DNA of 64,000 nucleotides from Botryllus schlosseri (lineage: Eukaryota), in the NCBI GenBank assembly GCA_051294905.1, contig CM119384.1, forward strand, positions 6,324,001-6,388,000, written 5' to 3'. Position numbers and translations under genes: made by a program. Position 1 is the first letter of the stretch. Each line of letters opens with the position of its first letter. Below the pieces are notes generated by a model. That model saw nothing but the letters and a program-made list of their open reading frames with translations, made no database searches and was not told the DNA's origin. Below, one piece after another: positions 10,601 to 55,264 of this stretch.

Positions 10601-13600
10601 TGTGGATACTATGCTCATCGCTCACGTTAGAGAGCACAACCTTGTACTGAGGTAAACTTTAATAACGTATGTTACGTGTGTGGCCTATTTTGTCTCGATA
10701 TTGCATTCTTGCAGTTCGCAAGCCGTTTTGACTCGGCGACCTCCGATCAAACACGTTGTTTGGTGTTCGCCGCCTATAGAAAACCACTTACTCTTAACAT
10801 TGCAATTCCGTCCCATATAATCATCTCGGCAAGTGCAAGTGTACTGGTTGTCCCCTCCCCTGTTACACACGCCTCCGTTCCCACATGGGTTAGGTGAGCA
10901 CGGATCTGTTTGGGATACAATTACATCACAGTATAGGATAAGGGATTGATAAGTTTTTAAAATTTGACACAATAATACTTTGGAAATAGTATGGAAAAGA
11001 GTCCTCGATTATTGATACTTGAGGTTGCATAAAAGTGACTTAATCTCCTCACCACCAACTGTTAATGAGACGGGTGTTTATTTTTGTACCTTCCGCTCAA
11101 GTAAAAGAGATTTCTCCGCCAATAGTTTATGTAATATGATATTAAACCACAAGATGTATTATTGGAAAAAGTTTGAAATACGCAGGTGCTATCTCAGGAC
11201 ATTTCAGTCATCAATGAATACCAATAGCAATAGTACCCTTGTTGAACTGGTTAAACGGCAAGACCAAGACTTCATTGGAATGGGAAATGTGCCTCGATGT
11301 TTCTTATCATCAAATTTATTATTCTCAAACTGCACAGGTCAAACATAATGATCAAAATGAAATGTATAATTTTGTACTTGCCTGGACAGGCACTTATAGG
11401 GATGCAGGTCTTATCGGTGGTACTTCTTTCGACATAACCCTCCTTGCACACACAATACTGGTCGATGTTGCAGGCAAGATTGCAGAACGATACTGGGTTT
11501 CCGCAACTCTCCTGGCAGTTTGAGGCGCAGTCCGTGTAGACCTGGTTGGGTCCACAATCAGGCTCTGTCAATGACACACATTTTATCATTAGATTAAAAA
11601 ATATTTTGCATCTTTTAATCCATTTCCTATCTGGATTAACAGTAGGACATGATATAGTTAATGTAACTTACCATTTTCGCATCGCGGCCCGGTATAACCA
11701 ATGCGGCATTGACATGTGTATCCGGTAGCAGTATCAGAAAGTGTGCAGAAACCTCCGTTTTGACACGGATTCCGTTCACATGGCGCTGAAATATAACATT
11801 GACGATATTAGACACTACTGATGTGATGAGTTGGCATTATTTGTCGGTAAAAATAATTTTTTATTACTTTGGTGCAAGCAGCATTGTTGTGTTCACACAT
11901 TTATCAGCTATGTGGAGAAATGCGGTGAGCACTTGGATCTTGAGCTTGTCAGTTTTTATTAACCCAACGGGATGTAATTCATGAAATGATTCAATCTATC
12001 ATTTCAATTAGAATCAAGGCATTGCATGATCGCAACTTACAGTTTTCACAGCGTAGTCCTGTGTATCCGAAACGGCATTGGCAAGTGAATCCAGCTAGAG
12101 TATCAACATCTGTACAGACACCTCCATTTTGACAAGGATTTGATCTACACGATGCTGAAAGATAATAGCGGCTATTCAGTATCAGTATCAGTATCAGTTA
12201 ATTATTATTTTCATCATTTCAAAACATCACAAAACTGCGATACAATGAAAAGATAGGGAGGTGTCGAAACGACTTGGAGTAGTCCTTGAGATCGGACACC
12301 CACCTTGGCCTAGTTACAGAATTTGCATTGGGGACTAGGCTGACCGACTCATTCCAAAATGGAGTTTAGGTTCCATTATTTTCGATAAGCATAATTTGAT
12401 GTTGTGCAACGTAATACCGAATCACAAATTACGTATAAGTCACAAAGTAAGTCATCAAGTATAGGCCCATTGTCTTTTCAATGACATTTCACATCTACAA
12501 GCATTTCAGTCAATGTATTAATGTAAATTGTGGTCAATCATAAACATGTATGAGGTAATGCCCCACCTTATTCTCCTATCCTACAAAATTGGACGCACAG
12601 ATATCATTTTCAAATCAATTTTGTCTCACTAAAGTCAGTTATGGCTGTTGAACATCAAATATCTGCTGGCTCAAAATTGGCACTAGCTCATTATTATTAT
12701 GTTGCAAATCACAAAAGACACAAAAGGATTAGGTTGACTACAGTGAAGTATTTTTTTATGATACGTCATTTTTCAATCATTCTTAAGCACAACTCGGTTT
12801 AATTTTTCGGCTGACATCACTCATGTCAATGTGGCTGCCCAATAAATGGTCATTGGTCAGTCTATCGAAGGCAAAATATCGATGTCTAAATTCTGACTTA
12901 ATGTAGTGAACCCACCGTTATATGTATGACTGAATGTATTTCGGAAGTTAAGACTTACTCAGTACTCTACGGTCAACAATCTCGTCGCAATTGATGCTAG
13001 GTTCACCAGGACGCGTTGTCGTGTCGGCTCTTCTCTCCCCGGTCTGTTGGTTCACGCACCAACATTCCCCGGTCGACGGGTGGCATTGTGTTGTACGGTA
13101 ATTTCCGTCAAGATCACAAGTGACGATGTACCGTCCCACCACAGAGGGAGACGCATTGCTTCTCATTTGACGTCTTCTTGCGCCGCAGCTGCCAGCAGCC
13201 CAAACTCGGCGCTCTGTATGACAATGGGAACATGTAGCTCGGCGATAATGTATCTTGCTATAAAAACTTTGGGAGAAGATTTCAATCAAATGGAAAAACA
13301 TGACGCTTCATGACTTAAATATCAATATAAAAATGAGTTCATGAAAATATATCTGTACTATTTTATTACAGTTTGTCACCTATTTTTTAAACTTTTTTAT
13401 GGTGTGCAGGTAATTGTTTCATCTAGTTTGATTGATAGCAGTAAATATGCCACATAATCTCTATATTACATTCATATCAGAACATTTAATTATTTTAATG
13501 CCATATAGGGATATATATGACTGCGTGATGCAACCACCTGACTTAATGACATTACGGTCGTACCACCGGCCACCATTTCACCGAATGATATTCCGTTATT

Positions 13601-16600
13601 TTTAGAAATGAACTTCTGTTTGTCAGTCTATGTTACCTCCTACGTCACAATTCAGGTTGAATTCGGCTCTTCGCATCCGTGTGTCATCAATTTCCTCTCC
13701 CGTGACAGGATCGACACAATAGCAATGGTTCAGGAATCCGTAGCATTGCCTTCTCTTGTAAGTGCCGTCGGCATTACATTCGAATATCATCGCGTCCATA
13801 AAACCTGCCATTTTGTCGTTGGCGTCTTGACAAGGCCCTGCGAAGTGGCCAATAATGTAAGGTGCGATCCAAAATTCAGTTCGGTCGAAAATTTATGAGA
13901 ATTAAAGGAGCTTGACCGTGATATCTGGGGAGCGTTTGACTATTTTAAAACGGCCATCCAATCCGGACAAATCTTATAAAGACAGCTGTTGAACGAAATG
14001 AACGATATGTAATCTTGCACAAACTTTTACAGAAACATAACCATTATCAGAATACAGAGACTTGCATCACAAGGGTTTGGATTTAATCCAGAAACAGAAT
14101 TGTCATTCGGCCCAGATCACATTAAGCACTAGTTTTTAATTCTTATCCTATTTCATTTCAAGCAGTACCTTGGTTATTCGGATGTAAGACATGCCTCTCT
14201 ATAAGATGATTCTAAGGAAGGGGAGATTGTAAGCATCGTACATGATATTCTAATGTTTGTGGTAAGCAGGGCAATGGGACAGGGGAAAATAGATAAACGC
14301 CTGTACTCGGAAGAAATGCAGTTTATTTTTGTCTGCACCACCGATGTGAGCTGAAGAGGCAAAACTCATCAAGTCGGCACACCATTTTTCTCTACACGCA
14401 ATCCCAGTATTCTGTGAACATAGCTGGGAAGTCACAGATACCACTTTTGTGATAAAATCTTTAGTGTGACTTGACCAGGGATTGAATTCACAACATACAA
14501 GGTAAGAAGCTGGACAGCTCTACCATTAAACTGTCTTGTCAGTACCTAAAAAGGTGACAAATCCACAGAAATGTAGTCTCAGTACTAAAAATCAACGGAG
14601 ATTTGTGCCAACACAGACGCATAGATCCCATATTTAGTAAGGGAAGAGGAATTTACTTACTTTTTGGTTTCATTGTTGGCTTCACTGTAGGCTTCGTGGT
14701 TGGTTCAACATCAACGATGGTGTCATCCTCGTCTTCTGTACGATGGACACGATTTGTTAGCAATCAGTAAGCATCGAATAATTTCGTGATACTTTTAAAC
14801 AGATGTGGAAGTGGTGTAGCTAATTTCAGGGAATGTCCAGTAGACCTGCACCAGCACTAGGTAACCGAAAAGAATGTGGATAAAAAGAGAAAGAGTTCTT
14901 AGAAAGGAGGACATTTTCAATTTCCTGAAAAATGACGACAAATCCTCCTGAAGTAGGACATATAGTAATCGTATACCAGTATACCTTAAATATAATATAA
15001 CACATTGTGACAACACAGTGAGCTTATCACTACTTCCAAGAAATGTCAGTTTTATGAGCATGCGCATGCGCAGCGCTTTGCCACATGCTTCGGATGCTGT
15101 GGAATTATCGAAATACTAAAAATCACACTAATGGCAAGGTACTGCTCGACTTGAAAAAGTGCAATCAATATGCGATTTGGATTCGAGTACCCGAATCATT
15201 TTGCCTATTCCTAATTAATTATCGCAAGTGCCGGGGATGGTTTTTGGGGGTAATATATTTGATAACAGGAACAGGCAACTGGGGGACAATACATTGTGTC
15301 ATTAAATCAACTGAACCTATGCAAAAGAACTTACTTTGACAGGAATATCCGTCTCCGGAATAGCCCCGTTTGCATCTGCATTGGTTCCGTCCTCTAACCA
15401 TCGCACAGACGGCGTCTTTGCCGCATCGTCGACCGAACATACGATGACAATCGTTGTCCCATTCGCCAGCTGTATTAACAACAATGCATTAGTGGATTCG
15501 CAACCTTCCACCTAACCCGAAGAACATACTTTGGCAGAAAAATCCGTTGCCCCAATAACCGCTCTTGCATACGCATCGGAAAGAACCATCGTCATCTTGC
15601 ACGCAGTCGGCGTTACTGTCACACATTCTTCCAAAATTCGTGTGGCATCCGGACTTCGGACTGCCCTCTGTTAGGGAGAGATTTGAATACAAATGTTGAG
15701 GCTGACAGAGATAGATATAGAGTAGCTTACGTCCGCAGTAGAGGCCGTTTCCGAAATAACCTGCCTTGCATCTGCATCGGTATCCGTCCTCACCAGCGTT
15801 TACGCACATAGCGTTTTCGCTACATCTTCTTCCGTAGCGTACAAAACACCCGGCTGGAATACAAAGTAATCTCTAGCCGTTGAGTATCACGAATTGCAGA
15901 GCAGGAACACAACATAGATCAGTTGAAAACTATATTTGTAATCCATTATAATGGTGGCAGCATTTTCAGCAATGAAGGCAGTTATAATCAATTGGCTTTG
16001 GCGTAATAAATATTGACATCGGAATCTGAATGATTTATATGGAAGTTCATCAACTCGAAGAAACAAGGATTGGAATAGAATGAAAAAAAGAAGGCGTGGA
16101 AGCGACTCCAACGATCCAGCAATCAAATTACCACCTTGGACTACAGATAGAGTCATAAAAATGTTTGAAAAAACATGTTATATATATATATAATAATAAT
16201 CTTGTATAGTAGCACACAGATATCTGATGTCTCACTGTGAGTAAGATGCGATCTCTCTCATTCAATAAACATACAAATTATAATATGTGCCAGGATCTTC
16301 GCTGTACTGATATCGAGTTGGAGCAATGCAATCAATTTGATCGTGAAGGATCATAATCATGATAGATTGATACCTAATCTCATCAACAAATAACGAGTAT
16401 TGTCAAAATGCTACTAAAATCACTGTCGTGTACAGTGGATACCGTAAAAATTAACTACAACATACTTCTGCATCGGAAACCATTTCCCAAATATCCCTGT
16501 CTGCACATGCATTTGTGAGAGCCATCTTCCATGGCCTGGCAGTCGGCATTCATGCCGCACCGTCTGCCGGCAGCACGGTGGCATTCGCTGTCCCATGTTC

Positions 16601-19600
16601 TACCCACTGAAACAGAAAAGGGGAGATGCTACATGGGAGCTTTCGGGATCGAAGAGAAATAAATTACTTGTGCAGAAGTAGCCGTTTCCAAAGTAGCCTT
16701 CGTTGCAACGGCATCTTTGAAGTCCGTCCTCGTCAACACAAGACGCGTCCTTATGACACCTCCTGCCGGCATATTCGTGGCACTTATCGTCCGGCACACC
16801 AGCTAACAAAAATGTAATCTGATTTAGATTTATCGTAATGATCAAGTCACCCGAGGTAGTCTGCTACTAAAATAGGAATAGACGTAAAGCCGTAAAAAAC
16901 ATAATTACATGTAGAAGTGATGAATTACATGACGTGTTAAAACTACTTGAAATAGAAGTAGTTTGGAAATAAGTAGTTTCAATTAGTCGATTCGGTCGAG
17001 GGGTACCATACTTTAGCAGTTGATCACAAATGGCTTCATTCAAAATTGCAAGATGCATCTTCACAACCAACACAAAAGCAACAATGACGCTACGAATAAG
17101 GGTAATCTTTGAACATATATTCACAAACCGTGATCCAGGGCTGATTTCACGCGGTTATTATGACATTCTGGCTCAGAAAATTGAAACGAACCGATCCCTA
17201 AACTACTTTTACTTTTCAAAATCAAGACTGTAAAAAGTAAGTAATTTTGTCAAAAAACTGTTAAATAAAAGTGTAGTACAATAACATTGACATTTGAGCA
17301 AGTAGTGAAATTAGGCAAAAGCTACCTGAGTAATCCAAAAAGAAGTAAAAGCACTTGGTGTAAGTACTTAGTGTGAGTACCTAGTGACCGCCTCTGTTAG
17401 TCAATAGGCGAACATATCAAAAATAGGTGGCAATAGTCTATATCTGATTCTCTCACATGAACAGTATTTTCCGTTTCCAAAGTACCCCTCTCTGCATACA
17501 CACATGTGAGTGCCGGCGATAACATAGCAGTCGGCATTTTCGCTGCAACGTTCATAGTCTTTTTCGTAGCACATCTCAAAGTCAGCCTTCACCGACCAGA
17601 CCTTGAATTCTGCGTCTAAAATGAATATTACAAGTGTAATTGGTAGCAACACCAAATCGTCATTGACAGTCCGCAGAACTAAATGATATCGATTATCGTT
17701 CTACACAATGAGTACAATTGGCATAGTAAAATTAGTGCTTATTGCTGTTTTGTATGTACAATTGCACATATTACGTATCAACAGATTAGAAAATTAGAGA
17801 GACTTCTTTAACGTGTGAAGTATAATAGTCACGGTCACAAGGTAAGGAATCTTCTGTAGAGCGAACTTGGCAAGTAGTTTTAGATGTGTCGCAGCGCAGT
17901 CGTCTAGAGTTTTACTGCACTACTTATTATTGAGTATAACAGCAGTGACTACCCCAACCCTATATTTGTGCATATATAGCCTCACATGTGTAACATACTT
18001 ACCATCGCAGTCAAATCCATCACCGAAGTAAGCCATGTTACATCTGCATGTAGGATTGCCATTGACCATCATGCATTTGGCATTTCTGTTGCATCGCCTT
18101 CCGAATCGTCGGTGACATTGAGACCTCCACTGTCCGGCTTTGAAGGCGAGAAAAATTTAATGACCGGTTCGAATTGACCTGATCAGGCGTGCATACTTGC
18201 GCAGTAAAATCCACCGCCCCAGTAGCCTGGATTGCAGACACATTTCGGCTTTCCATCTACCGTTTCGCAAGTGGCCTGTTGATGGCATCTTCTACCAAAG
18301 TCACGGTTACAATCTGAGGATGGCGTGCCACCTGAAAACGGAAAATTCATCGTGTTAAGTTGTTATTCCAATTTCACATTTGCATACATTTCAGTTTCAA
18401 ACGGACATGTTTTCAAATAAAACAGGATAGCTTAGCAAATGACGGTCAAGTTCTCTTCCTAGTATAGATTAGAATGATGATGACTCTTGTAAACTGAAAT
18501 CACATGAAATAAGTAAATATGTAGCCAGTTTTAGCCATGATATTAAGTCCTTGTAGTGCATATGTAGAGAGGTGTATATTCTTCTGTCCTATGAAGCCAA
18601 AAAATACACTTACTCATACAATACAGTCCATTTCCAAAGAATCCCGAACTGCAAACACATTGGTATTTACCATCTCTCTTCATGCAAGTAGCATCTTTCG
18701 AGCAAGCCCTCTTGTATCGTGCGCGGCATCCGTCTGTGTTTAGAGGGGAGTTTAGCAGTTTACCTCGGCGTTATTACTTTCAGATCAGTACCTCTGCAGA
18801 TGAAACCGTCTCCGACGTATCCATCTTGGCATTGACACTGAGATCGACCGTCGCCTCCTTTGACACATTGAGAGTTTCTTCCGCAGCGCCTGCCGTTACG
18901 TTGGTGACACTCATTATCCCAGGAACCGCCTGATATGAAGTATGCAAAATGATTACATCAAACACAGGCATCACAGGCAATGTTCCCTCTAAGCTGTGCA
19001 CGTGCGCAAATGCGCAGTGCTGAAACGGTGTCTGCGCACAGAAAATCTAGGATGCGCACAAAAAATTCGCAGTGATGACGTTTTTTTTAATCGTTGCGCA
19101 CTCTTGTCCAAGGCACCACGCAGGCGCTCTGACTCGAGAAAAATGAGAGGGAACATTGCCAGGGGTAAATAGTGCTATCGCTGAAGTCTGAAACCGAGTT
19201 AGGCCTACAAGTGCGGCCCGAAAAGGCAAATATTGCGCTCCGCGAAGCAATGAGAATTTGCAATCGTGTGCGACTCACGAAAGATATTTTTCTTTTACTA
19301 TGGTATCGTACGCGTGAGCGATACTGATATCATATCAATAGCGCAATCCTATGTGGGAATGGCGAAATAACGTGGTTTAACAAAATTATGAATAACAATG
19401 GGCTAGCTAGAAGTTAACTGCGAGAAACTAACGAATAGTCTTCTCCGCGTGTCATGAATATTGTATAAGATTTACTGTACAATTACATGCCGCGAATTTT
19501 CGAAGTCATCACTTCCATCAGGCGAATCTGATCACGTATGGTGATATAGGATAATATGCAGAATATGCAAGTACAAGCACCAATATTGTTGAAAAAATCC

Positions 19601-22600
19601 ATCCCTTTGCAAACGTTGATCGGGAAATGCAGCAACTATATGCACCGTAGGGCGTTGCATTAGATCAGCTTCTCAGCAGCACAAATTTGTGATTTTATTC
19701 GATTCGTTTGAACGCGTATCTTCTGTCGATAAGGTCATACGCTAATCTTGTTTTTGCTTCAATCAGACTTGAATATTCGTATCATTATATCTGACTGTAT
19801 GTCTTGACAGTAATGAGTGCATTGCCGGTATTAAGACGTCACATCAGTGTTTTAACGCGATAGGCCTACATCGATCGCATGTATTGATTTCAAGTGCGTT
19901 CTCGTGCGTGTATGTCTGTCTTCTAGTAATCCATAGTATGTCACCATATCGTCGCAGTGGAATCAAAGTGACTTATGTCATTGTCCAGATTTCAATATCT
20001 TTTGGCATAGCAGATAGGAGGTCACGAAATAGCATGATGTAAGGAAGTCATTATACCAACGGGTACGCCCGAAGATGTTTAATTATATTTAGGGGTCCTA
20101 CCTTTTCCAACACATCTCACTCGATCAGCTTTACCTGTATATGTAATTACGTGAGCAGAGACAGGATTAAAATTGACAGCAATATATGCAATTCCCGATG
20201 ATATTGGCCGATTTGATCATGAATTATAGAAAATTTTCGCGCCTGACGGGTTTAGGCGAAGTTAGGTATATCACTCTATGGGGGGCCTGGTTGCGCACTG
20301 TTGTCCAAGGGCCTGCACAGTGAGTTGGCGTATTTGCGCAGACTCGTGAAGAATTAAAGGGAACATTGATCACAGGCATTCGTAGTATCATGCGACTAAA
20401 TCATGGGTGTTGGATGGACATTGCTAGACACAACGCATGGTGTCTTGTGTATCATGTTGTATATTGTGCCTTAGCAGACAAAAATAGTATAACAGCTGAT
20501 AATAATCGTTATAAAGGGTGTGATTGATTCCGCTAACTCAACAGTCTCAACACCACTGTCAATTTTCAGAATGTCTAGTATATTTTAATACTAATTAAAA
20601 TGCTGGAAAAATTAAAGAAGTGTAAAAATGGTTGAAGCTTGTAAACTCAAACTTACGTGCGCAATAGAAGCCGTTTCCGAAAAATCCCTTGTTACATTTA
20701 CATTGAGGTCGGCCATCATCATCAGAACATGTTGCGTCTTGATGACATCGTCTTCCGAATCGTAAATGACAACGGGACCTCCAAACTCCACCTATACGAA
20801 AAGATCATAACTAAATAACTTTACCAATCTAGATGTAGCTAGTCTAAATTGATATAAATCATGAAATAGATCAACAAATGCAAGATCAATCTGATATTTC
20901 TATTATTCCATGGGCCATATGGATTGGCAGTAAGGAAAGGAATAAATAAGGGACACTGGATAGCAGTACGTACCATTTTGAAATTCTTCTCAAGACTAAA
21001 TTTCTTTCTAAAACTTTGCATCAAATTCGTCAACATTGTCGACATTTCAACACAGACAGTTTTGCTATTTTTGCGATAACCGGCGAAAGCTTAACCCGGT
21101 ATTTGCAGCACACTCACGTCCACAATAGTATCCCATTCCCCAATATCCGGGCTTGCATTTGCAGCGATATCGTCCAGACATTGTTTTTAAGCAGTCGGCA
21201 TGCTCGTGGCAAGATCTTTGGAGGTTATCTTCGCACTCTTGAGGATCCACGGGTGATGCCTCGGTGTCTGCATCTGCATAAGATTGGTATAATTTGTTAC
21301 CGAGGTGTAGACGGAAATTCATAACTACGATATGCTTGTATCACATATTGATAGAGTGGTAACAAGCATTTTGTATATAATAATAATAATATGAGATATT
21401 GATCTATATTATATTTCAGATATATGTATATATAAAGAGCTTTTTGGAGGTACAGAACTTCAATATACACTTGAATAGTTGCTGACGACTACCCCTGATG
21501 AGTGTCAGCCGAAAATATTCGGGCTCATTTCAATATGAATATACTATTCAATTATATGTATATGTATTTAGCAATGTTATCTCGTAATATGCACATTGTC
21601 CAAGTATTGTGATTGCTGGTCTAATTAGGAAAATTCAGAAATAATCATAGGTTCTGGAAAGCTGGATCCTAGATTTGGTAATTGCTAATTTTCGATTCAA
21701 ACTCTATTCAGAACTTCGTATGCATGATATATATCAGTGTTATACAACAAACTTCAGTATACCTTCACAGTAAAATCCTGTACCAAAGTAGCCCTTATTA
21801 CATCGGCATTTGGGTTCGGCACCAGAGGTGTCACAGCGTGCATTGGCATCACATCTGCGTCCAAAGAATTGGTGACATCTGCTTGAGTATGCTCCACCTA
21901 TTGTATGCAAAAGCATCAAGCTGAAGGAACTATTATACATGATTATTTATGTCAAAAACAAAAATTGAACATAACTAAACCAAGTTATGTTTACAAGTCA
22001 GTCTCGTTCAATTACTATAACAAAAAGTTTTATTCATTTATTACAGGAATAGTATTACATCCGGGACGTCAAAATAAACGTGGATGGTGGGCCAGATTCG
22101 TACCTCTTGATTGCTTACATGCCGGACCAGCCAAATGATTCTAAAATGTTACCTCCAAATACAAACCTTTATTTTCCACTGAAATGCCTTAATATCCAAT
22201 CTATAAATAATAGCATTCTTCTACCATCACCTTTATTCGCAAACAACGGTATTGGCAGAAATACAATGATTGGCTGATTCAATACAGTTACAAATTGCTA
22301 AAACAGTAGCTCTAACGATGACATAATTTGACCATCTGGCGGTTGTATGTTTGAAACCCTGATTTACATAAAATGTTGAACGCACAAAGAACAGGGAACT
22401 GTCTATTGTAATGCGCTGTAATTTGCTGAAAAAAGTTTTGAAAATTGTGATCCTCCAGAGCAGGGACTGTGATTCTATGATCATTCTACGCAATGGAAGC
22501 TATTCAGGAATTTGAGGACCTTCCTCTGCGAAATGAATTTACATATACACATAAATAAGTCAGAATATATTTGTATGGATTGCATGTTTTTACAGCAGTT

Positions 22601-25600
22601 TGCCTTCAACTATCACAAATCACATCGACTTACTTCCACAGTAGAATCCATTGCCGAAATACCCAGTATTACAAACACATTTAGATTCGCCATTAACTTG
22701 TTGGCACATCGCATTTTCATTGCAAGGCCTTCCATATTTTCGGTCACATTCGGATTTCGGTGTTCCACCTGTGTTCCACCCAAGGACAAGAATCAATGAG
22801 TAAATCCAGTGCAACATTAAAAAACAGTAGTACTCACGTCCGCAGTAGAATCCGTTTCCATAGAACCCGCTTCTGCATTGGCATCGATATTTCATTCCGT
22901 CTTTGACACAATCTGCGTTTTCATTACATCCTCGACCGAATTCCAATTCGCACGGTTCTGGTGAAACAGGGAAGTATTTAACCACATTGGAAGTAGAAGC
23001 TATTACATATAGAAAAACATAGTGATACAAGAAGACAAGATATGAAATAATTGATAAAATACAGCTCAGTATTTAAAGCAGTGTTTCTTAAACTTTTTAG
23101 CGCTCGTACCCCTTGAGCTGTCGTGAAATGTTTTTCGTACCCCCTATCCAGGATCGAAACAGCACTTTTTCAAGTCACCCTCAAAGGTCATGGACCCCAT
23201 AGGGTTTTCAGCACAACTTATTTTGATTTCAGGGACAGGAGATATTCATATCGAAGGTTTCGCCGATGTCCTGTGATTTTAGGGTCCAAAGTAAATATTT
23301 TGTCGGGGGGAATGACATACCCAAATTTAGTGTAAGAATTCGATTGAAAGGAATCGCGCCAAGCGCAAAGAAAATTTTAGAGTTGAAGAAGTCCGGCCAA
23401 TAATATTCCATTTGCAAAATATATGCGTAATTAAATAACGTATAATTGCACACTGCATCTCATACCCCCTACTTTTGTGATTCGTACCCCCAAAGGGTCC
23501 GTGGGCCCCTGTTTAAGAACCGCTGTGTCAAAGACTAACTAGATACCGTATTCATAAATGGATAACACTCACTTTTGCACGTAAGTCCATCTCCAACGTA
23601 TCCTTCATTACAGACACATTTCGCATTAGCTTCAGATGTATCGCAGCGTGCGTTAGAAGAGCATCGTCGCGCATATCGTCTGTGACATTCATTGACCCAA
23701 CTTCCAGCTGCAGACACAATTAACAATTACATACCTGCTCACTGCCCAACAATTTATCCAAAAACTACATCATGAAAATTGTTGTTTTTTGTAAGTCATG
23801 ATTAGGGCACAAATGGATTATACTCTTTTTGAATGACCGTCTAATTACAAATCGAGGGAGATGGGAAGATGCATCTTGCAAGTTTGAGAGTGGCCACCTT
23901 ATGATTAACTTCCATATGTACACGACCCCTACATCAAATCTACAATTTGAAACTACTTAGTTAGTTTCAGACTTTATCTACCTTCCCCTTATATTACTTT
24001 ATCTACTTCCTCTTGTAGTAGCTTTGACAGTTCTTGGAAAGTGCTATTTCTACTAATAATTTAGTAGAAATTCATGGCGTTACTTCTGCTTATACTCGAG
24101 TATTCATTAGGTGCAAAAGAAGAACTTACATCGGCAGAAAAACCCGTTTCCGAAAAAGCCATCTTTACATGCGCAAGTGGGATTGGCCCCTGGCGTACAT
24201 TCTGCGTCTCTGTGGCATTTTCTTCCGAATCTTCGAGCGCAGGGACCTTTCTCTGCGTCACCTGTTTTTCAGAATGACAGAAATAGGAATTGTCATCAAT
24301 ACTAATACGCCATTGAGAAAACTAGACCGTTGAACGACAGTCATAGAGAGCATGTGACGTGTGATGAAAATTGTCTTACCAACGCAATAGAGGCCGTTGC
24401 CGACATATCCCGCTTTGCAACGGCACATGTACTTGTCTCCAGACTTATAACAGTTGGCATTGGCGGAACAAAATTTGAAGAATCGTCTGTAACACATCAT
24501 ACCGTCCACCGGCTCGTCTTTTGGCATCGGCATAACATCAACAACGCTGGGATCCTCTGCAACATCATATTACATGGTTCAAATTACAGATTGAAAGTTT
24601 CAAAACACTAGTATTGAATTATAGGAACCTAGGCCTATAAAAATAGATATTTTAGAGATTCAGATGTTTCACAGGATAATTTTGTGCACAAACTCAACTG
24701 TAGTGCCGGAAGAAATATCAACTCACTATCACAAGAATAGCCATCTCCAGAATAACCTCGTTTGCACCTGCAAACGTTTCGTCCGCGTACTCTCGCACAA
24801 GCGGCATCTTTACCACACCGTCTACCGGACATACGATGGCATTCATTATCCCATTTTCCACCTATAATGAAATGAATGTCGATTAAAACGCTATTTCCTA
24901 TTTTTGCAGTAAAGGGCATATACTTTGACAGTAGAATCCATTGCCCCAATAAGAGCTCTTGCACACGCATCGGAAAGAACCATCGTCGCCTTCTAGACAA
25001 TCGGCGTTAGCGTGACACATTCTTCCGAATTGAGTATGACATCCGGACTTAGGACTGCCCTCTGAATATTAAACGATTAATGTAGAGGGACATGAAATCA
25101 TATGAAAATAAAATGAATACATACGTGCACAATTCTGGCCATTTCCGAAATAGCCTGTCTTGCATTGACATTGATAACCTCTTGCGCCTGTGTTGACGCA
25201 CATCGCGTTTGCATCACACGGTCTGCCGAATCTCATGAAGCACGCTCCTGTATTGCAAAGATAATTTAATATTTTTGCACGATTAATGTCAAGTTGCAGA
25301 AATTCTGATAGGAAAACCATCCTCAAGTTGAACACCTCAACCTGCCGCGGAAATTTAATTGAATTTACGGCTTTATGACATTTCCTGGTGAACCTTCAAG
25401 GTTTGTGATACTGGTGCCGGAAAAAGTTCTTACTAACCTCGGCAAAAGAATCCATTTCCGAAATAGCCGTCTTTGCACACGCATTTGTGAGATCCGTCTT
25501 CCATCGACTGGCAGTCGGCATTCGACGCACATCGCCTACCGGACTCTCGGTGACATTCGTTGTCCCAGGAACTGCCCACTGGAAAATCGAAGAGCGATAC

Positions 25601-28600
25601 TATTTCGATACTTTGTCGATTTCACCGGAATGACTTACTCGCGCAGTAATAGCCATTTCCAAAGTAACCCTCGTTGCAACGGCATCTGCTAATTCCGTCT
25701 TCGTCAACGCAGGAAGCGTCTTTGTGGCACATTCTTCCGGAAAATCGTTGGCACTCATTACTCGGCGTACCAGCTGATTTGAAATAGAAAATGGCATTAT
25801 TACATTTCTTATTATACAATCTGTCTGCAGATTTACAGCAAATTACAAAATCAGTATTTTACAGATTCCCAGTAAAATATCTTACAGTCGGTCGATGTGA
25901 TAGTTGCAAATCGGCAATAGTATCACAATAATAATTAATATTAGTATATTAGGAGTTAAATCCGCGTATCTCACATGAACAATATTTTCCGTTTCCATAA
26001 TAGCCTTCTTTACAAACGCATTTGTACAATCCGCTGACCATGAAACAGTCAGCGTTTTCACTGCAACTTTCGTAATCTTGTTCATAGCACATTTCAGCGT
26101 CGACCATCACGGACCAAACCTTGAAATCCGAGTCTACAACCAACAATAACATGATCAGCAAAAGTAGCAATAAAGACCAGAAAAGCATTTGTCATAATTT
26201 GTCTCACTTACCATCACAGTTGAAACCGTCTCCAAAATATCCCTTCTTGCATCGGCACTCGGGGTTGCCATTGACCATCATGCATCTGGCATTTCTGTTA
26301 CACCGCCTTCCGAATCGTCGGTGACATCGAGACCTCCACTGTCCAGCTGTGAAGGCGAGATAAATTAAATGACAAGTTCAAATTGACCTGGTCATGGAGT
26401 GCTTACTTGCGCAGTAAAATCCACCGCCCCAGTAGCCTGGATTGCAGACGCACTTTGGCCTTCCCTCTACATTTTGGCAAGTGGCATGTTGATGGCATCT
26501 TCTACCAGAGTCACGGTTGCAATCTGAGGATGGCCTGCCACCTGAAAACGAGATATTCATTGCTGTTTTCTCTCGCCCCAAACTCGCTGTATCGATGCAC
26601 GTTTTTGCATATCATATTACTAATCAACTGTGAGCCACATCAGACACACCTTTATCTATAACCGACTATTCACTTACTCATGCAGTATAGTCCATTTCCA
26701 AAGAATCCAATTCGACAAGCACATTGGTATCTTCCGTCTATCCTGACGCATGTCGCGTCTTTCGAGCATGCTCTCTTGTATCTTGCGCGGCAGCCATCTA
26801 CACAATGCGTTTCCATGTTAAATTATGTAATTTTGTGATATTTCGTGTATGCTGCAATTTTACCTCTGCAAATGAAGCCGTTTCCAGCATATCCTTCGCG
26901 GCATTGACACTGAGCTGAACCATCGCTTCCTGTGACACACTGAGAGTTTGCTCCGCAGCGGCGGCCGTTGCGCCTGTGACACTCGTTGTCCCAAGACCCG
27001 CCTAACATTTCAAAACGGATTCGTTAATAATATGCCGCATTTATCCTAATACCAAAGATACTGAGGTCAGCATCTCATGTTATTGATGTAAGTGTAGTTA
27101 AGAGTAAATACAGGCGTAATCTGATTTCTTGTGCACTTAACAGACTGATCTTCACAAGGCAATGAGTTGGGGAAAAAGTAGCCTACTTTATTGCCACAAA
27201 AACCAACAAAATAATTTGAACAAACGTCTTTGAACAAGTTACCCTTTTTAGATCACATTTCCCCTCTTTAATCAATACAATCATCCAAAATATGAGAGAA
27301 AGCATCATACTTGCGCAGTAGAAACCGTTTCCGAAGAATCCTGCGTTACATCGGCACTGAGGTTGGCCGTCATCATCCATACACGTAGCGTCTTGATGAC
27401 ATCGTCTTCCGAATCGGAATTGACAACGGGACTTCCAAGCACCCTCTGTCAAACAAAATAGAAATAGGTATATTCGGATTGCGCTTCGCATATATCATAA
27501 CTGCCAACCGCAGCATAGAGATTTCAGGATAGAATGCAAGATTCTCTGACTCTGAGAAAAATACATTTCTTATTATAACCTGAAGAGCCCAAGAGAATGA
27601 GCTCGCATATCAGGAATTATTAATGTTAAGACAACGCAAATGATGCCTGATCAGTGATATTTTCCATGATTCGACGTGACGAATGATATACATTTGGTGA
27701 CAGTGTTTCCTCTGAAACCTAAATTACTCAAATATGTTGGAAATATACAACAAGATATTCTAACAAATAGTTGAATCAAATGATCCAATTTCTCCTGCAA
27801 TCTACAATACATTATATCGCCAGACCACAACTTTTGGACATTGATGTTACACATCCCATAGCATCATAAGATCAACAATATCAGTGGAGATTAGCTTGAT
27901 TACAAAAGTATCACCCAGTCCATTGTACAAAACTCACTTCCGCAGTAGAATCCCATTCCCCAATATCCGGGCTTGCATTTGCAGCGGTATCGTCCGGACA
28001 TCGTTTTCAAGCAATCGGCATGTTCGTGGCATGATTTTTGAAGGTTATCTTCGCATTCTTGAGCATCCACGGACATGACATCGGTGTCAGCATCTGTGTA
28101 CGGTTGAATTTCACTCAAATGTAGATCTACTCAACACGACAAGAATCAGCGTACTAATTTCGATCAATTACCGAGCGGTTGAATGTGTGCTAATTTCAAT
28201 GCAATAATAAATTGCGCATTCACTCAGTTCCAGCATTGAGATCAAGTTAGAATCGTTATTTCTCAAACTGAGGCAGGAGTCATATGTGTTTCATGATCAC
28301 TACTCATCAATTCTAAGTTCTGTATGAGAAAAGCTAACCTTCGCAATGGAAGCCAGTTCCAAAGTAACCTCTCTTGCATCGACACTGCGGTTCCGCACCA
28401 GTTGTGTCGCAGAGAGCATTGGCGTCACATCGGCGTCCGAAGAATTGGTGACAACGATTTGCGTAAACTCCACCTGGCCCCAAAAAATGGTAAGTTATAG
28501 GAATGTCATTTACCTAAAATAACTACCGTCATATTGAGACCAAAGAGAGAAATAGTTGAAAGTTACTGCCTATATGCACTTTCTATATGCAATCTTTCTA

Positions 28601-31600
28601 TACATACTTCCACAATAGAATCCATTGCCAAAGTAGCCAGCGTTACAAACACATTTAGCTTCGCCATTAACTGTTCGGCACGCCGCTTGTTGATTGCAAG
28701 GCCTTCCGAATCTTCTGTGGCAATTAGATTTGGGAGTTCCGCCTAAAATCGAACGACATTTAATAATACATAGTTCACCACCGTCCAATGTTAGCACGCA
28801 CGTCCACAGTATAATCCATTTCCATAATAACCGGATCTGCATTGGCATCGGTATCTCATTCCGTCTTTGACGCACTGTGCATTTTCGTTGCAGTCACGCC
28901 CGAACGCGAGTTCGCATGGTTCTAGTAAATAAGAAATCAAATTTGCATCATCTTAAATTAAGCAATCAGTAAGGTCTCAAAATTAAAAATGATTGCACAT
29001 AAATAGCAGCAACACACTACATGAAAAACCAATGTACACAAATGCACATGGCCATCGGTTAAATCACAACGTCCAGTAATCACGTTCTTCAGTGCTTCAC
29101 ACTCACTGGCATGCATTTTTAAACAACCATCTTTAAAATTGAGGTAGTAGCTGCTGCTGGTCTGATGTCTATTGGCCATGTTATTATTGCTGTATAGGAA
29201 AGGTTACTTAGGCCCATTCAACCAGGAGCATAACCGAATAGCTAACTTGTGACCGAAGTTGTCTTACCGATAACATGTCTAACACGTTTAACTAACAAGT
29301 CTCTGATTATGGCAATACAAATAATGATAATATATGCATATTCACTTACTTCTACACATAATTCCATTTCCAACGTATCCATCGTTGCAGATACACTCGG
29401 GATCGGCTCCACTTACATCACAACGCGCATTAGCAGAGCATCGGCGTCCATACCGTCTGTGACACTGGTTGACCCAACGCCCGGCTAAAAAGAAAGTTAT
29501 CTCGCTTCAAAAATACTCATTACTATGTAACTGTTGAAGGTTATGATAAGTCACAGTCAATACAACATTATGACTATTTGATTGGATTTTCATGATGATA
29601 GCACACATTGCATTATGTATAAAAAAAAAAACATTGATATCGCAGGCGTATTTAAGAAATAAAACGAAAAGATAGATAACCTACAACAAAACAGGGTGTT
29701 AGATTTGGTTATAAAATTCAGAACAAAAAAAGTTCATCTATGAGATATTCATGTGCCAGTGCAGTAACAGTTCTACATCAGGCAAAGACAGTAGGATATG
29801 AATGAATATAAAATTGACATCAATCCGTCCTATTTTTGGACATATTAATTCACTATATACTGGAACCTACATCGACAGTAAAATCCATTTCCAAAGAATC
29901 CTTCTTTACATCTACACTGAGGCAAGGCGCCTTGAACACATTCTGCATCTCTGTGACACCTTCTTCCAAACCGTCTTCCACAGACATCCCTCTCTCGATT
30001 GCCTGTATTTCACAAATTAGTCAGTGAGGATCCCAACAGGTACGGCTGTATTTCAAGATTTTTTTCTAAGTCGCAGACTGAAATCCAGCTGGTCTATCTG
30101 GGTATATGTGCTCTAGGGAAAGGGAATTTGGCTACAGATAATAATATAGACCAAGGAATATAATCACACGGTCAACTTTGATACAGAAGAAAACCAATAG
30201 GTGTTCAGTAATAAAGTACTTCTACATTTATTAAGTACTCAAGTGAGTTTTGACTGTCTGATTCCACTGATAGTTACATTTTAAAGCACTTTAAGGTATA
30301 CTTCCATAACTTCTACTATTTAGAATTTGTCAAGAAGAAAGTTATATATGGATTGGATAGATTCGCATCTTGTTGTGGGTGATATTGCTAAGGCAACTGG
30401 GCGATGTATTATAATTTTGAGAAATGGACCTGGACCTGCTTTCATCATCATTATAGTCATGCATAAACTAATTTTGAAATCTGCCACCAGCGATTGACAA
30501 AGGCTTAATTCTCATCACGCACATCTAATGAAGGCAAATTTGTAGGTACAGTGTCAGATGAAAATTTATGAGCTGTAGTAATTGTATTAGGAATGGCACT
30601 CTAACACGTTTAAGCAACCATACGCCTAAACACAGCGTAACAAGAATTCCAGCCACGGCCTCGTTCTTACTTAAGCAATAGCGTCCATTTCCGATATACC
30701 CAACTTTGCATCTGCATTCATACTTGTCGCCTACTTGATAGCAGTCGCCATTGTGGGAACAATACGAGAACAGGTTCCTGTAACACATCGAGCCATGCAC
30801 CTGCTTGTCAGATGGGGCAGGTGCGGGAGTAGGAGTGGACGGGACGCCTGAAACTGAATATTACACTTTACTGGCACCCATTGAAGGGATATCTGGTCCG
30901 TGCAAAAAATACCGCATGTTGTGGGTTCTCCCAGGAACTCGACAATGGTATCTCCACTTGTTCGGTACGCGTTAATAATTCCGGCCCTTGATGCATCGCC
31001 CATGGAAGACACCCAAATACTGAAACATGAATAACAGACATTTTACATTTTTTTGTGTAGTTGTTTATCCAGTTTAAACTGGCATTAAATAGATAAAATT
31101 ATCATTTTATTACATATTATGCACATCTATATGATTATTGTCATTATTACAACACATAATTGATATTGGTAATCGTCAGTAACTAGTCGAGAATTGAAAA
31201 GAACTTTGAATAAAATTTCGCTTTGAGTCATGAGTCGATCTACATCTAACGCTGAGTTATAATGACAATATATAATATGTATAATTGTATATACATCCTA
31301 TATACATCATATATGCCCAAATTACCTACAGATGATAATTATTATATTTGTGACTTGATGACCCAACAGCTGCATCGTTGGACACCATTTCAATGAAAAA
31401 GCGATTCTCTTAATATTGGAAATGAAGCTTAGTAATATCCACCAAAGTGTAGTCATAAACCGGAAACTAACGTGAAAGTTAAAGTGAGTTCGGCCTTTCC
31501 GTCGGTAGCGACATTGAAATTGACTTGATAATTTGCTCGTCTGAATCCATTGTAGCCGTTATAAATTCTCTGCAGGCCATCTCTTGCGCGTTGGAAGTTC

Positions 31601-34600
31601 GACTGGAACCACGCATTGTAATTACCTTCAGCGATATCGGCTCTCACCAGAAATCTGAGGCAAGATTCCCTATCTGCAAAAAAGAAAAAGTGATTATCGT
31701 ACAGTGCACTTATGTGTAGCTGCCTTCAAGTTATCATCATTAGCACTTTGTGGATTAAGGACGTTTGATTTTCATGTCTGCTACTGCTACAACAGCAAAA
31801 AGGATAAAGAACAAGGTACGCGTGTAGTGTCCTGGCGATCATCGGCATTCCAGATGTTTCATAATACAGCGGTGTGTATTTTGCCTTCCAAAGCTATGTC
31901 AGTAGTGAAAAATGTTGAATTAAAAACTCACCAACGGGACAGTCGTCTGCTGGAATGCAGGTGGCATCAACAGAGCTTCTTCGGATCATACCCTGCGGGC
32001 AGACGCACGGATCATTGCGATTGCACCCTCGGTTACACCTCGGTGTAGGGTTTTCGCATGTAGGTGGACAATTCGTGGCGCATCTGACCCTGACTTTCAT
32101 TCCGGAGCATTTTTGTTCTTTGAAAAATACAGAACATGAGTATCGAAAAAGCAGCGTACAGTAGTATGTACTGTAGGTAGGAATTTAAGAATATATGTAT
32201 CTGTATCTGGTAAAGGACTGGAAAAAACTGTTGGCACAGAAACTGACATTAGTTGTCTTACCTTAAATATGGCACATTTGACCTAAATCATAGCCCGTTC
32301 CATGTTACAAAGACGGAAAATTCGCTAACATGAGGTTGAAGAAATACAACCTGATAGTGATAAATATGGAATAGAAGTATATAAATAAAATGAACACAAG
32401 CAACCAAAGACACCGTTGAATAATCCAAACAGAATGTCCATGAACCCATTACCCTTTATTTTAACACGTTAGGGCAGTGCTAGTTTAGACACTTAAAAAC
32501 CCACAGCAAACTCACCAACGCATTTATTATTCTGGCGTATGTAGCCAGATTTGCACGAGCAAGAAAGTCGGTTGGATCCTTGACAGTTGCAGATGGTATT
32601 CTCGACTTTGTCTTCAATTTGACCACCTGAATTACGGAATAATGATGTATTTACCTCATGAAGCCTAGTTCTGAATGATGATTATAAGGTTGTATTCACT
32701 ACTTTAATGATGTTTCAAACTAAGACTCAACCAATCAATATGCAATCGAGGATCGGTGTAATACGATTTGAAAGTCTTGACTGCATTGCAGCAGTGACTG
32801 CATTGCACCATTGACTGCATTGCAGCATTGGCCGCATTGTATTGCTGTTCAATGCACTCAATCAGTATCAATATCAGTTTATTATTATTTTCATCATTTC
32901 AAAACACCACAAAACTGCGATACAATGAAAAGATGGGAAGGTGTCGAAATGACTTGGAAATTGTCTTTGAAATCAGACACCCACACCCAAATGGCAAGAT
33001 TGATATAAAGATCATGTTTCACAGTAGTCATCATGGTCAACATATCTCATTCCACATTGATAGGGTAAAAAAATTGCATCAAATGATGCTCAAATAAATT
33101 CATCAACAAAAGGTAGCACATAACCTTGATTTCATACACTGCGCGTTAATTTAAATCTGACGTTTATGAAAATTATGGACATTCAACAAGAATTATGTTC
33201 ATGGAAGCTTGACTGAATGACTTAATTTACTTTCAAAGCTGTTGGGTAGAAGTTGAAACATACCACTGCTACATTCAAAATAGTCTGAATCCACTCGAAA
33301 TAACATTATAACTGCACTGACCAGTGGATACATAAAATCCTTGAAGAGCGCAACCGCATTGGCTTCTCACAACGCACTTGTTACCGTCGTACACGTATCC
33401 GAAATCACAAACGCAAGCTTCCACGACATCATCAGAGTCGCACCTATGACCAACAGTCCGATAAGCGACAATGCTCAGGATCAAAGCAATCGTAAACTTA
33501 CGCCAATGAAGCGAATGGGTTAAGGCAGGTGTCCTGGCAGACAGAAGCGCAAGGTGTGTACGTGCTGTGAGTCGGACAGTTAGGTGCGGCCATTTTAGCA
33601 GCTGGCCTCCAGTCACATAATTCAACTCCCCGGTCCAAACAATTCATTGCGTAATCTTCGAAGATCTGATGAATACAAATGGTCGGTAAAAATTCACTGT
33701 AGCTAACGAGTAGGTTCTTCTGCGAAACACTGCTATATCAATAGCAGTAACAAACAGAAGTAACCAATGCATACTCAATAATATCAGCAAAAATTTGGAT
33801 AATAATAATTGATAGAGCGCAATATATCATCCTTACACAAAGGCGCTGTACAAAGGCGTTCGTAACATATCGAAAGTATAACGATATGTATACAAGACCG
33901 AATGCATAGTTGTAAGCAATGAATGGATAACATCTAAAAGAGTGAGGCATTGCAGAAAGGAATTTCATGATAATACATGGCGTGCGATAAATTACTGGGA
34001 ATGTTGAATTGATGTTCAAAATCATTGAAAATGAAATTGAAGGCATTTTAATTACTGAAATAGTACCGTTTTTATAGATCATGTAATTTATATCACATTG
34101 AGATTCGTAACGGCATATAACCAAATATAGTATCTCTATCTCTCTCTCACTCTCTCTTTATTACTGAAACTTTTCAGGTTGCTTTGAATGAAGCTAGTTT
34201 ATGAACTTACCATTGAAATGATGTCGGCGTTACCCGCGTCATCGCAAGCATCTTCAAGACATCTCTGATAGTCGCCATCCGAATCAGCGGAAACGCAACC
34301 ACCGAAAAATCCGGCACGATCACGTAAAGCCCCGCAAGCATCGGAACCAGACCTTGGCAAATAATTGTGCATTTAATGGGGGCTAATTTCTGAAAACAGC
34401 TCAGAAGCACGTTTCATACTAAATTACAAGCTCGTAATGATAAAGCGATATAACACCATTCACTTCATATAGTGCATCAGTATGTGCATTGCGTAATCAC
34501 CACAGAAACGAGATTTAGAAGCCAAACGCCAGTATATTCACTAAATACCATTTCAAGTGGATTTATTGTGTCTTGTCCATTGCTGTGCATATATCATCAT

Positions 34601-54966: not shown

Positions 54967-55190
54967 CCCTCAAACTGATTTTTCTCCTTTTCCAAGACAT
55001 ACCGCCTATCGCGTCACAATATCGAGTCTTGTAATACATAGATTCGAATATATGCGAGGCAGAAAATGCTGTAGCATAATCAGCCTGACCAAATGATCCG
55101 AGTCACAAATCTCACTGACTAGGTTAGATAAGCCATAAGAAGATAATCTCTATTCGTATAACATTCATCACAACCTTCACCGTTTGTATA

Positions 55191-55193
<3 letters not shown>

Positions 55194-55260
<67 letters not shown>
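55194..55260. repeat. (GT)n microsatellite, about 33 units
   Basis: Pure GT run seen directly. Confidence 0.97.

Positions 55261-55264
<4 letters not shown>

What the first reader, a model, noticed from the sequence alone, without database searches (positions are those of the whole stretch)
15335..30847. Hierarchical EGF array: 6-exon unit x3 = 18-exon block, duplicated x2
Both blocks have the same exon-length vector: 177,132,135,120,135,135,156,135,138,120,135,135,159,135,141,123,138,135. Within a block, positions 1/7/13 are long (extended linker, Tyr-rich). Positions 4/10/16 are short and start E/D/G-x-C. Positions 2/8/14 share CH-x-DA-x-C, 3/9/15 share W-x-N-x-CHR, 5/11/17 share G-x-P-x-S-x-C, and 6/12/18 share CRCK-x-GY. 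This records an old hexamer triplication followed by a younger 18-mer duplication, resembling the super-repeats of titin or nebulin. It suggests the hexamer is a functional length unit.
Basis: seen in the sequence. Interest (0 to 1): 0.75.

Follow-up and report, generated by a model that had tools for sequence, protein, structure and literature searches.

The report
Nested EGF-exon duplications, sea-squirt gene
A stretch of 36 small exons, each coding one EGF module of a large secreted sea-squirt protein, was built by repeated copying of ever larger exon blocks (3, 6, 18, then 36); it is real and transcribed, but it is a tidy example of a known way that modular proteins grow, not a new kind of thing.

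Summary
Each encodes one EGF_3-type module. RNA contigs from two studies show 16 of the 17 introns tested, including the A18-to-B01 joint.

The two 18-exon blocks pair exon for exon (mean 76% amino-acid identity). They are not recent copies: dS is about 1.1, dN/dS is 0.125, and the introns are randomised except for one conversion patch. So this is no assembly artefact.

Within a block, period 6 is significant. Spacers between modules run 8,8,3,8,8,long without exception.

The "functional length unit" idea is not supported. The only close relative in public protein data, Styela clava "zonadhesin-like", uses the same three spacer types with a period of 4.

Multi-domain duplication units are documented (Björklund 2006), so this is a new member of a known kind.

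The scan noted other block-wise EGF duplications in this same genome, at other loci (s1-300887, s1-270963).

The parts
15335..30847 (-). Whole array: 36 single-module EGF_3 exons, all phase 1-1, 4,968 nt spliced, no stop
   Evidence: spliced in RNA contigs
24727..30847 (-). Block A (exons A01-A18)
   Evidence: 16 of 17 introns in 24380-30002 seen as GT..AG joints in runs X19 and X7
15335..24556 (-). Block B (exons B01-B18), same exon-length vector as block A
   Evidence: A18-to-B01 joint in run X7; an X7 RNA contig carries the 3' end of B10 joined to a B11-like exon
28339..30847 (-). Hexamer A-H1 (A01-A06); A01 has a Pro/Thr-rich 20-residue leader
26212..28093 (-). Hexamer A-H2 (A07-A12); 14-residue acidic spacer before A07
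24727..26133 (-). Hexamer A-H3 (A13-A18); 16-residue spacer before A13
21763..24556 (-). Hexamer B-H1 (B01-B06); 22-residue spacer before B01
18003..21273 (-). Hexamer B-H2 (B07-B12)
15335..17615 (-). Hexamer B-H3 (B13-B18)
26206..26567 (-). Block A side of a probable gene-conversion patch (exons A11-A12 and the intron between them). It is 86% identical over 363 nt to 17997-18356. dS for A11/B11 is 0.18, against 1.1 overall.
17997..18356 (-). Block B side of the same conversion patch (B11-B12)
18978..20369 (.). Young dispersed repeat of about 1.3-1.4 kb inside the 1,727-nt intron after B08. Dozens of copies (lower bound) at 91-96% identity lie on most large contigs. The matching block A intron (309 nt) lacks it.
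31897..32184 (-). TIL exon just upstream of the array (context: end of the VWD-C8-TIL head)
12951..13892 (-). Two thyroglobulin type-1 exons just downstream of the array (context)

Best explanation
The array is the EGF stalk of a large secreted mosaic protein. Upstream lie a SUEL lectin, a WxxW-like region, two sushi domains, two VWD-C8-TIL units and a further TIL. Downstream lie thyroglobulin-1, TIL and more EGF exons. The gene belongs to a tunicate (sea squirt). The stalk grew by nested tandem duplication of exon blocks, most probably through unequal crossing-over in introns. Because every exon is one module between phase-1 introns, any block copy stays in frame. A three-exon unit (Tyr-type module, G-x-P-type module, G-x-W-type module) was doubled to a hexamer. 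The two halves then diverged, giving a long leader on module 1 and a 3-residue spacer before module 4. The hexamer was copied to three, and the resulting 18-exon block was copied once more. Since that last step both blocks have been kept by purifying selection on every module and on every spacer length. Neutral sites have saturated and transposons have entered introns independently. Shown here: exon structure, splicing, the nested similarity pattern, divergence and selection. Inferred: unequal crossing-over as the mechanism, a stalk or spacer role, and that the periodicity is mainly a record of history rather than a ruler.
For: Exon structure, phases and open frame. RNA joints at the predicted splice sites in two runs from different studies, including the block A-to-B joint. 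An independent DNA sample (X5) carries block A with its introns. Block A aligns to block B colinearly only, at 74-87% identity in the aligned pieces. dS 1.13, dN 0.14, dN/dS 0.125. Short introns align no better than shuffled ones, except one conversion patch. Periods 3 and 6 are significant with and without linkers, and periods 2, 4, 5, 7, 8, 9 are not significant with linkers (core only: period 2 is marginal, p 0.02; 4, 5, 9 are not). Period 6 adds to period 3 (p 0.009). Trees. No Styela module or third-array module falls inside any A/B pair. The spacer series is 8,8,3,8,8,L throughout. A third EGF_3 array 25-31 kb downstream on the same strand keeps the trimer register in its first eight modules and is transcribed. 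Head domains. The head is colinear with Styela clava XP_039253313.1 at 28-77% identity per matched piece (mostly 45-77%), and this locus is that protein's best match in the genome. Multi-domain duplication units are a documented way of repeat growth: PMC1553488.
Against: Period 6 over period 3 rests on a small margin (49% against 46% identity, p 0.009) plus the length and motif pattern. The order in which the three hexamers arose is unresolved. In the single-module tree only class 3 is one clade, and class 4 needs three changes. I did not see a transcript that links the array to the VWD head or to the thyroglobulin exons. No experiment bears on function.
Confidence: 0.8

Rival explanations
1. 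The hexamer is a functional super-repeat, a structural ruler as in nebulin or titin. In this reading, six modules between flexible leaders set a spacing needed for assembly or for a periodic partner, and selection, not history alone, keeps the number six.
For: The spacer pattern 8,8,3,8,8,long is kept without exception across six hexamers, and across a duplication with saturated synonymous sites. Class-specific motifs persist.
Against: The only close homologue (Styela clava) uses the same spacer types as long,3,8,8, which is a unit of four modules. The third array downstream shows the trimer register but no clear period 6. Purifying selection on each small disulfide-rich module alone would also freeze the lengths. 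No partner or periodic target is known.
Confidence: 0.12
2. The array is a substrate for regulated exon skipping. Because all 36 exons are phase 1-1, any subset could be left out to give stalks of variable length.
For: All exons are symmetrical in phase. An earlier first-stage note of the scan raised the same idea for neighbouring arrays (s1-270963, unchecked).
Against: In two runs all joints listed link neighbouring exons only (16 of 17 introns). No joint skipping a whole exon was listed, although three joints were not shown and contigs drop rare forms.
Confidence: 0.06
3. Block B is an assembly artefact: a falsely duplicated haplotype or a collapsed-repeat error.
For: Tandem repeats of this size are a classic source of assembly error, and I could not examine long reads.
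Against: The blocks differ at 9-40% of exon nucleotides, and their introns are unalignable and of different lengths. Block B has a transposon that block A lacks. dN/dS is 0.125 with both frames open. RNA joins A18 to B01 and carries B10-specific sequence, and DNA from another sample holds a sequence resembling the intron after B17 (25 of 30 letters).
Confidence: 0.02

Closest known systems
Styela clava 'zonadhesin-like' XP_039253313.1 (1,395 aa; P0041)
   Same: The head has the same order of parts (WxxW-like region, two sushi, two VWD-C8-TIL units) and is colinear with window 51914-33320 at 28-77% identity per matched piece (mostly 45-77%). It is followed by EGF_3 modules of the same subtype (C-x-R-x-x-G-R-x-C first loop, G-Y/F-x-G-N-G-x-x-C end), up to 64% identical to single exons here. 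It uses the same three spacer types: 3 residues, 8 residues, and a long acidic one.
   Different: The model has only 9 EGF modules, arranged with period 4 (long,3,8,8) and not 6. It has no 18-module blocks and no thyroglobulin tail in the model. The model may be truncated, and I could not fetch its locus.
Super-repeats of nebulin (7 modules) and titin (7 and 11 domains); multi-domain duplication units in general (Björklund, Ekman and Elofsson 2006, PMC1553488)
   Same: Similarity peaks at a fixed lag greater than 1, because several neighbouring domains were copied together, with blocks of exons as the unit.
   Different: In nebulin the unit matches a known periodic partner, the thin filament (my own knowledge). 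Here no partner is known. The same paper reports EGF as a family mostly duplicated one domain at a time, so periods of 3, 6 and 18 are at the unusual end for EGF.
Vertebrate VWD-C8-TIL proteins: FCGBP, zonadhesin, gel-forming mucins
   Same: The head of the gene (through the Styela homologue) matches them at 21-33% identity over about three quarters of the 930-residue head for most, with VWD, C8, TIL and TILa domains.
   Different: None of those listed carries a long EGF_3 stalk after the VWD units. They repeat VWD units or mucin regions instead (Pfam columns).
EGF domains of uromodulin (6tqk, 6zs5) and NELL1/2 (6pol, 6pog)
   Same: These are the best solved-structure matches to the profile of the 36 modules (E 7e-18 to 5e-16). 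They share the G-Y/F-x-G-D/N-G-x-x-C ending typical of EGF_3.
   Different: Those proteins have two to six such modules, not an array. The Arg-rich first loop and the G-x-W or G-x-P linkers are not shared (alignments).

Membership tests
EGF_3 (Pfam PF12947) EGF-like domain | Sequence match above Pfam's gathering score | tested here: met
   Two-module pieces score 57.4 and 62.3 bits against a cut-off of 28.5. Single exons score 27.0-32.0, so some sit at the threshold. The profile of all 36 hits uromodulin EGF domains at E 7e-18.
EGF_3 (Pfam PF12947) EGF-like domain | Six cysteines with EGF spacing, and one module per phase-1 exon | tested here: met
   All 36 modules have loop lengths 7,5,8-9 (7 in A02 and B02),1,10. 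All introns are phase 1.
EGF_3 (Pfam PF12947) EGF-like domain | Disulfide pattern 1-3, 2-4, 5-6 and the EGF fold | not tested
   No structure was predicted.
Calcium-binding EGF (PF07645) | D/N-x-D/N-E/Q-C start and a match above threshold | tested here: not met
   The best EGF_CA score is 26.8, below the cut-off of 27, and most exons give none. Linkers read G-x-W-x-x-x-C or G-x-P-x-S-x-C, not D-x-D-E-C.
Super-repeat protein in the nebulin/titin sense | Similarity between domains peaks at a fixed lag greater than 1 | tested here: met
   Lag 6 gives 0.50, lag 3 gives 0.47, lag 12 gives 0.47; other lags give 0.39-0.43 (lags 16-17, on one or two pairs only, lower). The 18-lag partners are at 0.76.
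Super-repeat protein in the nebulin/titin sense | Unit size conserved between species and matched to a periodic partner | tested here: not met
   The one available homologue (Styela clava) has a unit of four modules. No partner is known. Only one species could be compared.
VWD-C8-TIL secreted proteins (zonadhesin / FCGBP / mucin group) | VWD, C8 and TIL domains in the same gene, upstream of the array | tested here: inconclusive
   TIL, TILa and a weak VWD match (19.9 bits, cut-off 22.9) were found on single exons. The region is colinear with a Styela protein that carries VWD, C8, TIL and TILa. No transcript linking the head to the array was seen.

The most novel reading that the evidence does not exclude
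Six EGF modules, split 3+3 by a tight 3-residue joint and bounded by flexible acidic or Pro-rich leaders, would form a true structural super-repeat. It would set a fixed segment length in a secreted VWD-linked fibre (mucus net, tunic or adhesive). That would be an extracellular counterpart of the nebulin/titin ruler principle, with the unit size tuned differently in different sea squirts (six here, four in Styela).
Probability: 0.1. Interest if true: 0.6.

Novelty: new member of a known kind. Interest (0 to 1): 0.3.

Why it matters
This is an unusually clean, four-level record (3, 6, 18, 36) of how an extracellular protein stalk grows by copying blocks of symmetrical exons. Every level is still readable, and the last copy has been held under purifying selection long after neutral sites saturated. 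It could serve as a teaching or benchmark case for methods that reconstruct repeat histories. It also shows that EGF arrays, usually thought to grow one module at a time, can grow in large blocks. It does not open a new mechanism, and the biological role of the protein remains unknown.

Tried and rejected
1. A profile of the 36 modules was searched against 1.84 billion representative proteins. The best hits had about 11 bits per module and were generic EGF_3 giants from a nemertean, a sponge and metagenomes. No array like this one was found, and the genome's own protein is apparently not in the library. Only P0041 had uniformly high per-module scores.

2. The look-up of encoding contigs for P0041 found nothing on record, so the Styela locus could not be inspected for further exons.

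3. The search for homologous proteins was run with the EGF part and with the head of P0041. No further tunicate relatives appeared within the length limits. The EGF-part search found generic nidogen- and fibrillin-like arrays at 26-36% identity. The head search found vertebrate FCGBP, zonadhesin and mucins.

4. A search of the own genome with whole P0041 was swamped by intronless giant EGF exons on C9 and C10. It was repeated with the head only.

5. Raw RNA-seq run X23 gave a single read on the stretch, so nothing could be learnt about RNA ends or expression level.

6. Loose ends in the read table that looked like odd joints proved to be contigs of paralogous exons: C01 and C05 of the third array, and B10.

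7. Period 9 (3, 9, 18) was tested and was not significant.

8. Literature searches for this gene in ascidians or the endostyle found nothing specific.

9. No structure was predicted, because spliced multi-exon proteins cannot be given by reference.
Full report
WHAT IS THERE

The gene lies on the minus strand. A six-frame scan for the EGF cysteine pattern found 36 modules between 30785 and 15339, and four more of the same type at 443-2329. All introns are phase 1. The 36 exons join into 4,968 nt without a stop. The limits 30847 and 15335 are those of the finding. Each exon encodes one module with loop lengths 7,5,8-9 (7 in A02 and B02),1,10. The modules match Pfam EGF_3, and a profile of all 36 hits the EGF domains of uromodulin and NELL1/2 among solved structures.

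IS IT TRANSCRIBED, AND IS IT AN ARTEFACT?

I laid four public runs on 24380-30002.
- Contigs of two runs from different studies (X19, X7) show joints with CT..AC ends on the plus strand, which is GT..AG on the gene's strand. They sit at the predicted borders of 16 of the 17 introns in that stretch, including the joint from A18 to B01 that links the two blocks.
- A third run from another sample (X5) carries block A with its introns at 92-99% likeness.
- Loose ends in that table turned out to be contigs of paralogous exons. One is the 3' end of B10 joined to a B11-like exon. Others come from a third array downstream.

Against an artefact:
- Block A aligns to block B only colinearly, at 74-87% in the aligned pieces.
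- Exon nucleotide identity is 60-91%.
- Short introns align no better than shuffled sequence, 0.49-0.57 against about 0.50.
- The 1,727-nt intron after B08 is filled by a dispersed repeat with dozens of copies at 91-96% identity. The matching A intron lacks it.

THE HIERARCHY

A/B partners average 76% amino-acid identity (range 55-86%). The partner is the best hit for 35 of 36 exons.

After averaging over A/B partners into an 18 x 18 matrix, I compared label shuffles for several periods:
- Period 6: z 5.5, p<5e-5.
- Period 3: z 6.7, p<5e-5.
- Periods 2, 4, 5, 7, 8 and 9 show nothing.

The same result holds when only the variable columns between the first and last cysteine are used, with z 5.2 for period 6 and 5.7 for period 3. 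The signal is therefore not made by the linkers. Mean identities are 0.49 (same position mod 6), 0.46 (same mod 3 only) and 0.41 (other). The step from 3 to 6 is significant within mod-3 classes (p 0.009).

The trees agree:
- The single-exon tree needs 7 changes of the six class labels (minimum 5, shuffled mean 24). It recovers class 3 as a clade, and classes 3+6 together at 94/92.
- When the three exons of each trimer are concatenated, all six A/B pairs are sisters (94-100), and odd and even trimers separate at 87/94. That is the topology expected if a hexamer, made of two diverged trimers, was copied as a unit.
- The order of the three hexamers is unresolved.

The spacer series between modules is 8,8,3,8,8,L (L = 14, 16 or 22) for all 35 junctions. 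The history is therefore 3, 6, 18, 36.

AGE AND SELECTION

For exons 2-18 concatenated, dS is 1.13, dN is 0.14 and dN/dS is 0.125. The last duplication is old enough for neutral sites to be saturated, and both copies have been under purifying selection. One patch is much more alike: A11-A12 with the intron between them, window 26206-26567 against 17997-18356. It is 86% identical over 363 nt, the intron is 83% identical, and dS for A11/B11 is 0.18. This is best read as a later gene conversion.

CONTEXT

Upstream on the same strand are:
- a SUEL lectin exon at 52.7-53.0 kb
- two sushi exons
- TIL and TILa exons and a weak VWD match
- a TIL exon at 31897-32184

Downstream are two thyroglobulin type-1 exons (12951-13892), then further EGF, TIL and thyroglobulin exons down to the window's start.

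The window is C14:6324001-6388000 of a 496-Mb assembly. On the same strand, 25-31 kb before the window's start, lies a third array of 14 EGF_3 exons of the same subtype. Its first eight modules keep the trimer register: C01 is most like positions 8, C02 and C05 most like positions 9 and 15, and C04 and C07 are of the G-x-P type. In the joint tree C02 and C05 fall in one starred clade with positions 9, 15 and 18. Beyond it lies a 2,094-codon open exon with a near-identical two-module repeat. I did not establish whether all of this is one gene.

RELATIVES

A profile of the 36 modules searched against 1.84 billion representative proteins gave no comparable array. The top hits had about 11 bits per module. 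The exception is a 1,395-residue protein whose nine modules all score 38-57 bits. It is XP_039253313.1, 'zonadhesin-like', of the sea squirt Styela clava.

Its first 918 residues map colinearly onto window 51914-33320 at 28-77% identity per piece (mostly 45-77%). This locus is its best match in the genome. That result, together with notes of other agents of this scan, is my basis for calling the organism a sea squirt.

The Styela modules belong to the same subtype, up to 64% identical to single exons, and use the same three spacer types. The order is different, however: long,3,8,8 twice and then a ninth module, which is a unit of four. In the joint tree no Styela module falls inside an A/B pair. 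Its four Tyr-type modules lie outside the clade of G-x-P and G-x-W types. The module classes are therefore older than the arrays built from them.

Further searches found only vertebrate FCGBP, zonadhesin and mucins for the head (21-33% identity) and generic EGF_3 arrays for the stalk.

HOW IT MOST LIKELY WORKS

Shown: a transcribed array of symmetrical single-module exons, with nested similarity, conserved lengths and purifying selection.

Inferred:
- Growth was by unequal crossing-over in introns. Björklund et al. 2006 discuss recombination in intron regions (exon shuffling) as one possible route of repeat growth, and find exon borders enriched in EGF linkers (PMC1553488).
- The array is a long, largely non-calcium-binding EGF stalk in a secreted, probably disulfide-linked VWD protein. 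The EGF_CA match is below threshold.

On the length-unit idea: the strict spacer pattern shows selection on spacer lengths. The four-module unit in Styela and the weak period 6 in the third array argue that six is a historical number, not a required one. I give the ruler reading about 0.1.

COMPARISON AND NOVELTY

Duplication of several domains at a time, and super-repeats, are well documented. The same paper reports EGF as mostly duplicated singly, so this array is at the unusual end for its family, but it is not a new kind of thing. Other block-wise EGF duplications were noted by this scan elsewhere in the same genome (s1-300887 and s1-270963), and I saw several myself. Verdict: a new member of a known kind, of modest interest.

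Noticed in passing
G000:C14:6292892-6299236 (L002), minus strand, 25-31 kb before the window's start: A third array of 14 EGF_3 exons of the same subtype (CHRYNGRRC, G-x-W-D-N-x-C). Its first eight modules keep the same three-module register. Contigs of it are present in RNA runs X19 and X7.
   Followed up: partly
G000:C14:6281701-6287772 (L001), minus strand: One open frame of 2,094 codons holds about 30 EGF_3 modules in a two-module repeat, with many copies nearly identical. This is a recent intronless expansion, in contrast to the old one-exon-per-module array. Similar giant EGF frames lie on C10 (about 3.14-3.15 Mb and 2.35-2.36 Mb) and C9 (about 7.46-7.47 Mb and 7.81-7.82 Mb).
   Followed up: no
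G000:C14:6315213-6323725 (L004, L005), minus strand: About two dozen 'CEPNPCMNGGMC' classical EGF exons with near-identical sequence and periods of two or three. This matches the first-stage note s1-270963.
   Followed up: no
window 36416-37441, minus strand: A 342-codon open frame matches reverse transcriptase (RVT_1, 58 bits). It is probably a LINE fragment inside an intron of the VWD head.
   Followed up: partly
window 17997-18356 and 26206-26567: A patch covering exons 11-12 and the intron between them is far more alike between the blocks (86%; dS 0.18 for A11/B11) than the rest (dS about 1.1). This is probably gene conversion.
   Followed up: yes
window 18978-20369: A dispersed repeat of about 1.3-1.4 kb, with dozens of copies at 91-96% identity across the genome, is inserted in the intron after exon B08. 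The family was not identified.
   Followed up: partly
window 55139-55302: A (TG)n microsatellite.
   Followed up: no
window 443-2329, minus strand: Four further EGF_3-type modules lie far downstream of the array, after the thyroglobulin, TIL and classical EGF exons.
   Followed up: no
G000:C14:6304035-6308793 (L003): A second, weaker match (37-41%) to the VWD part of the Styela protein lies in the downstream region. The neighbourhood therefore holds either a tandem paralogue or a very long single gene.
   Followed up: no
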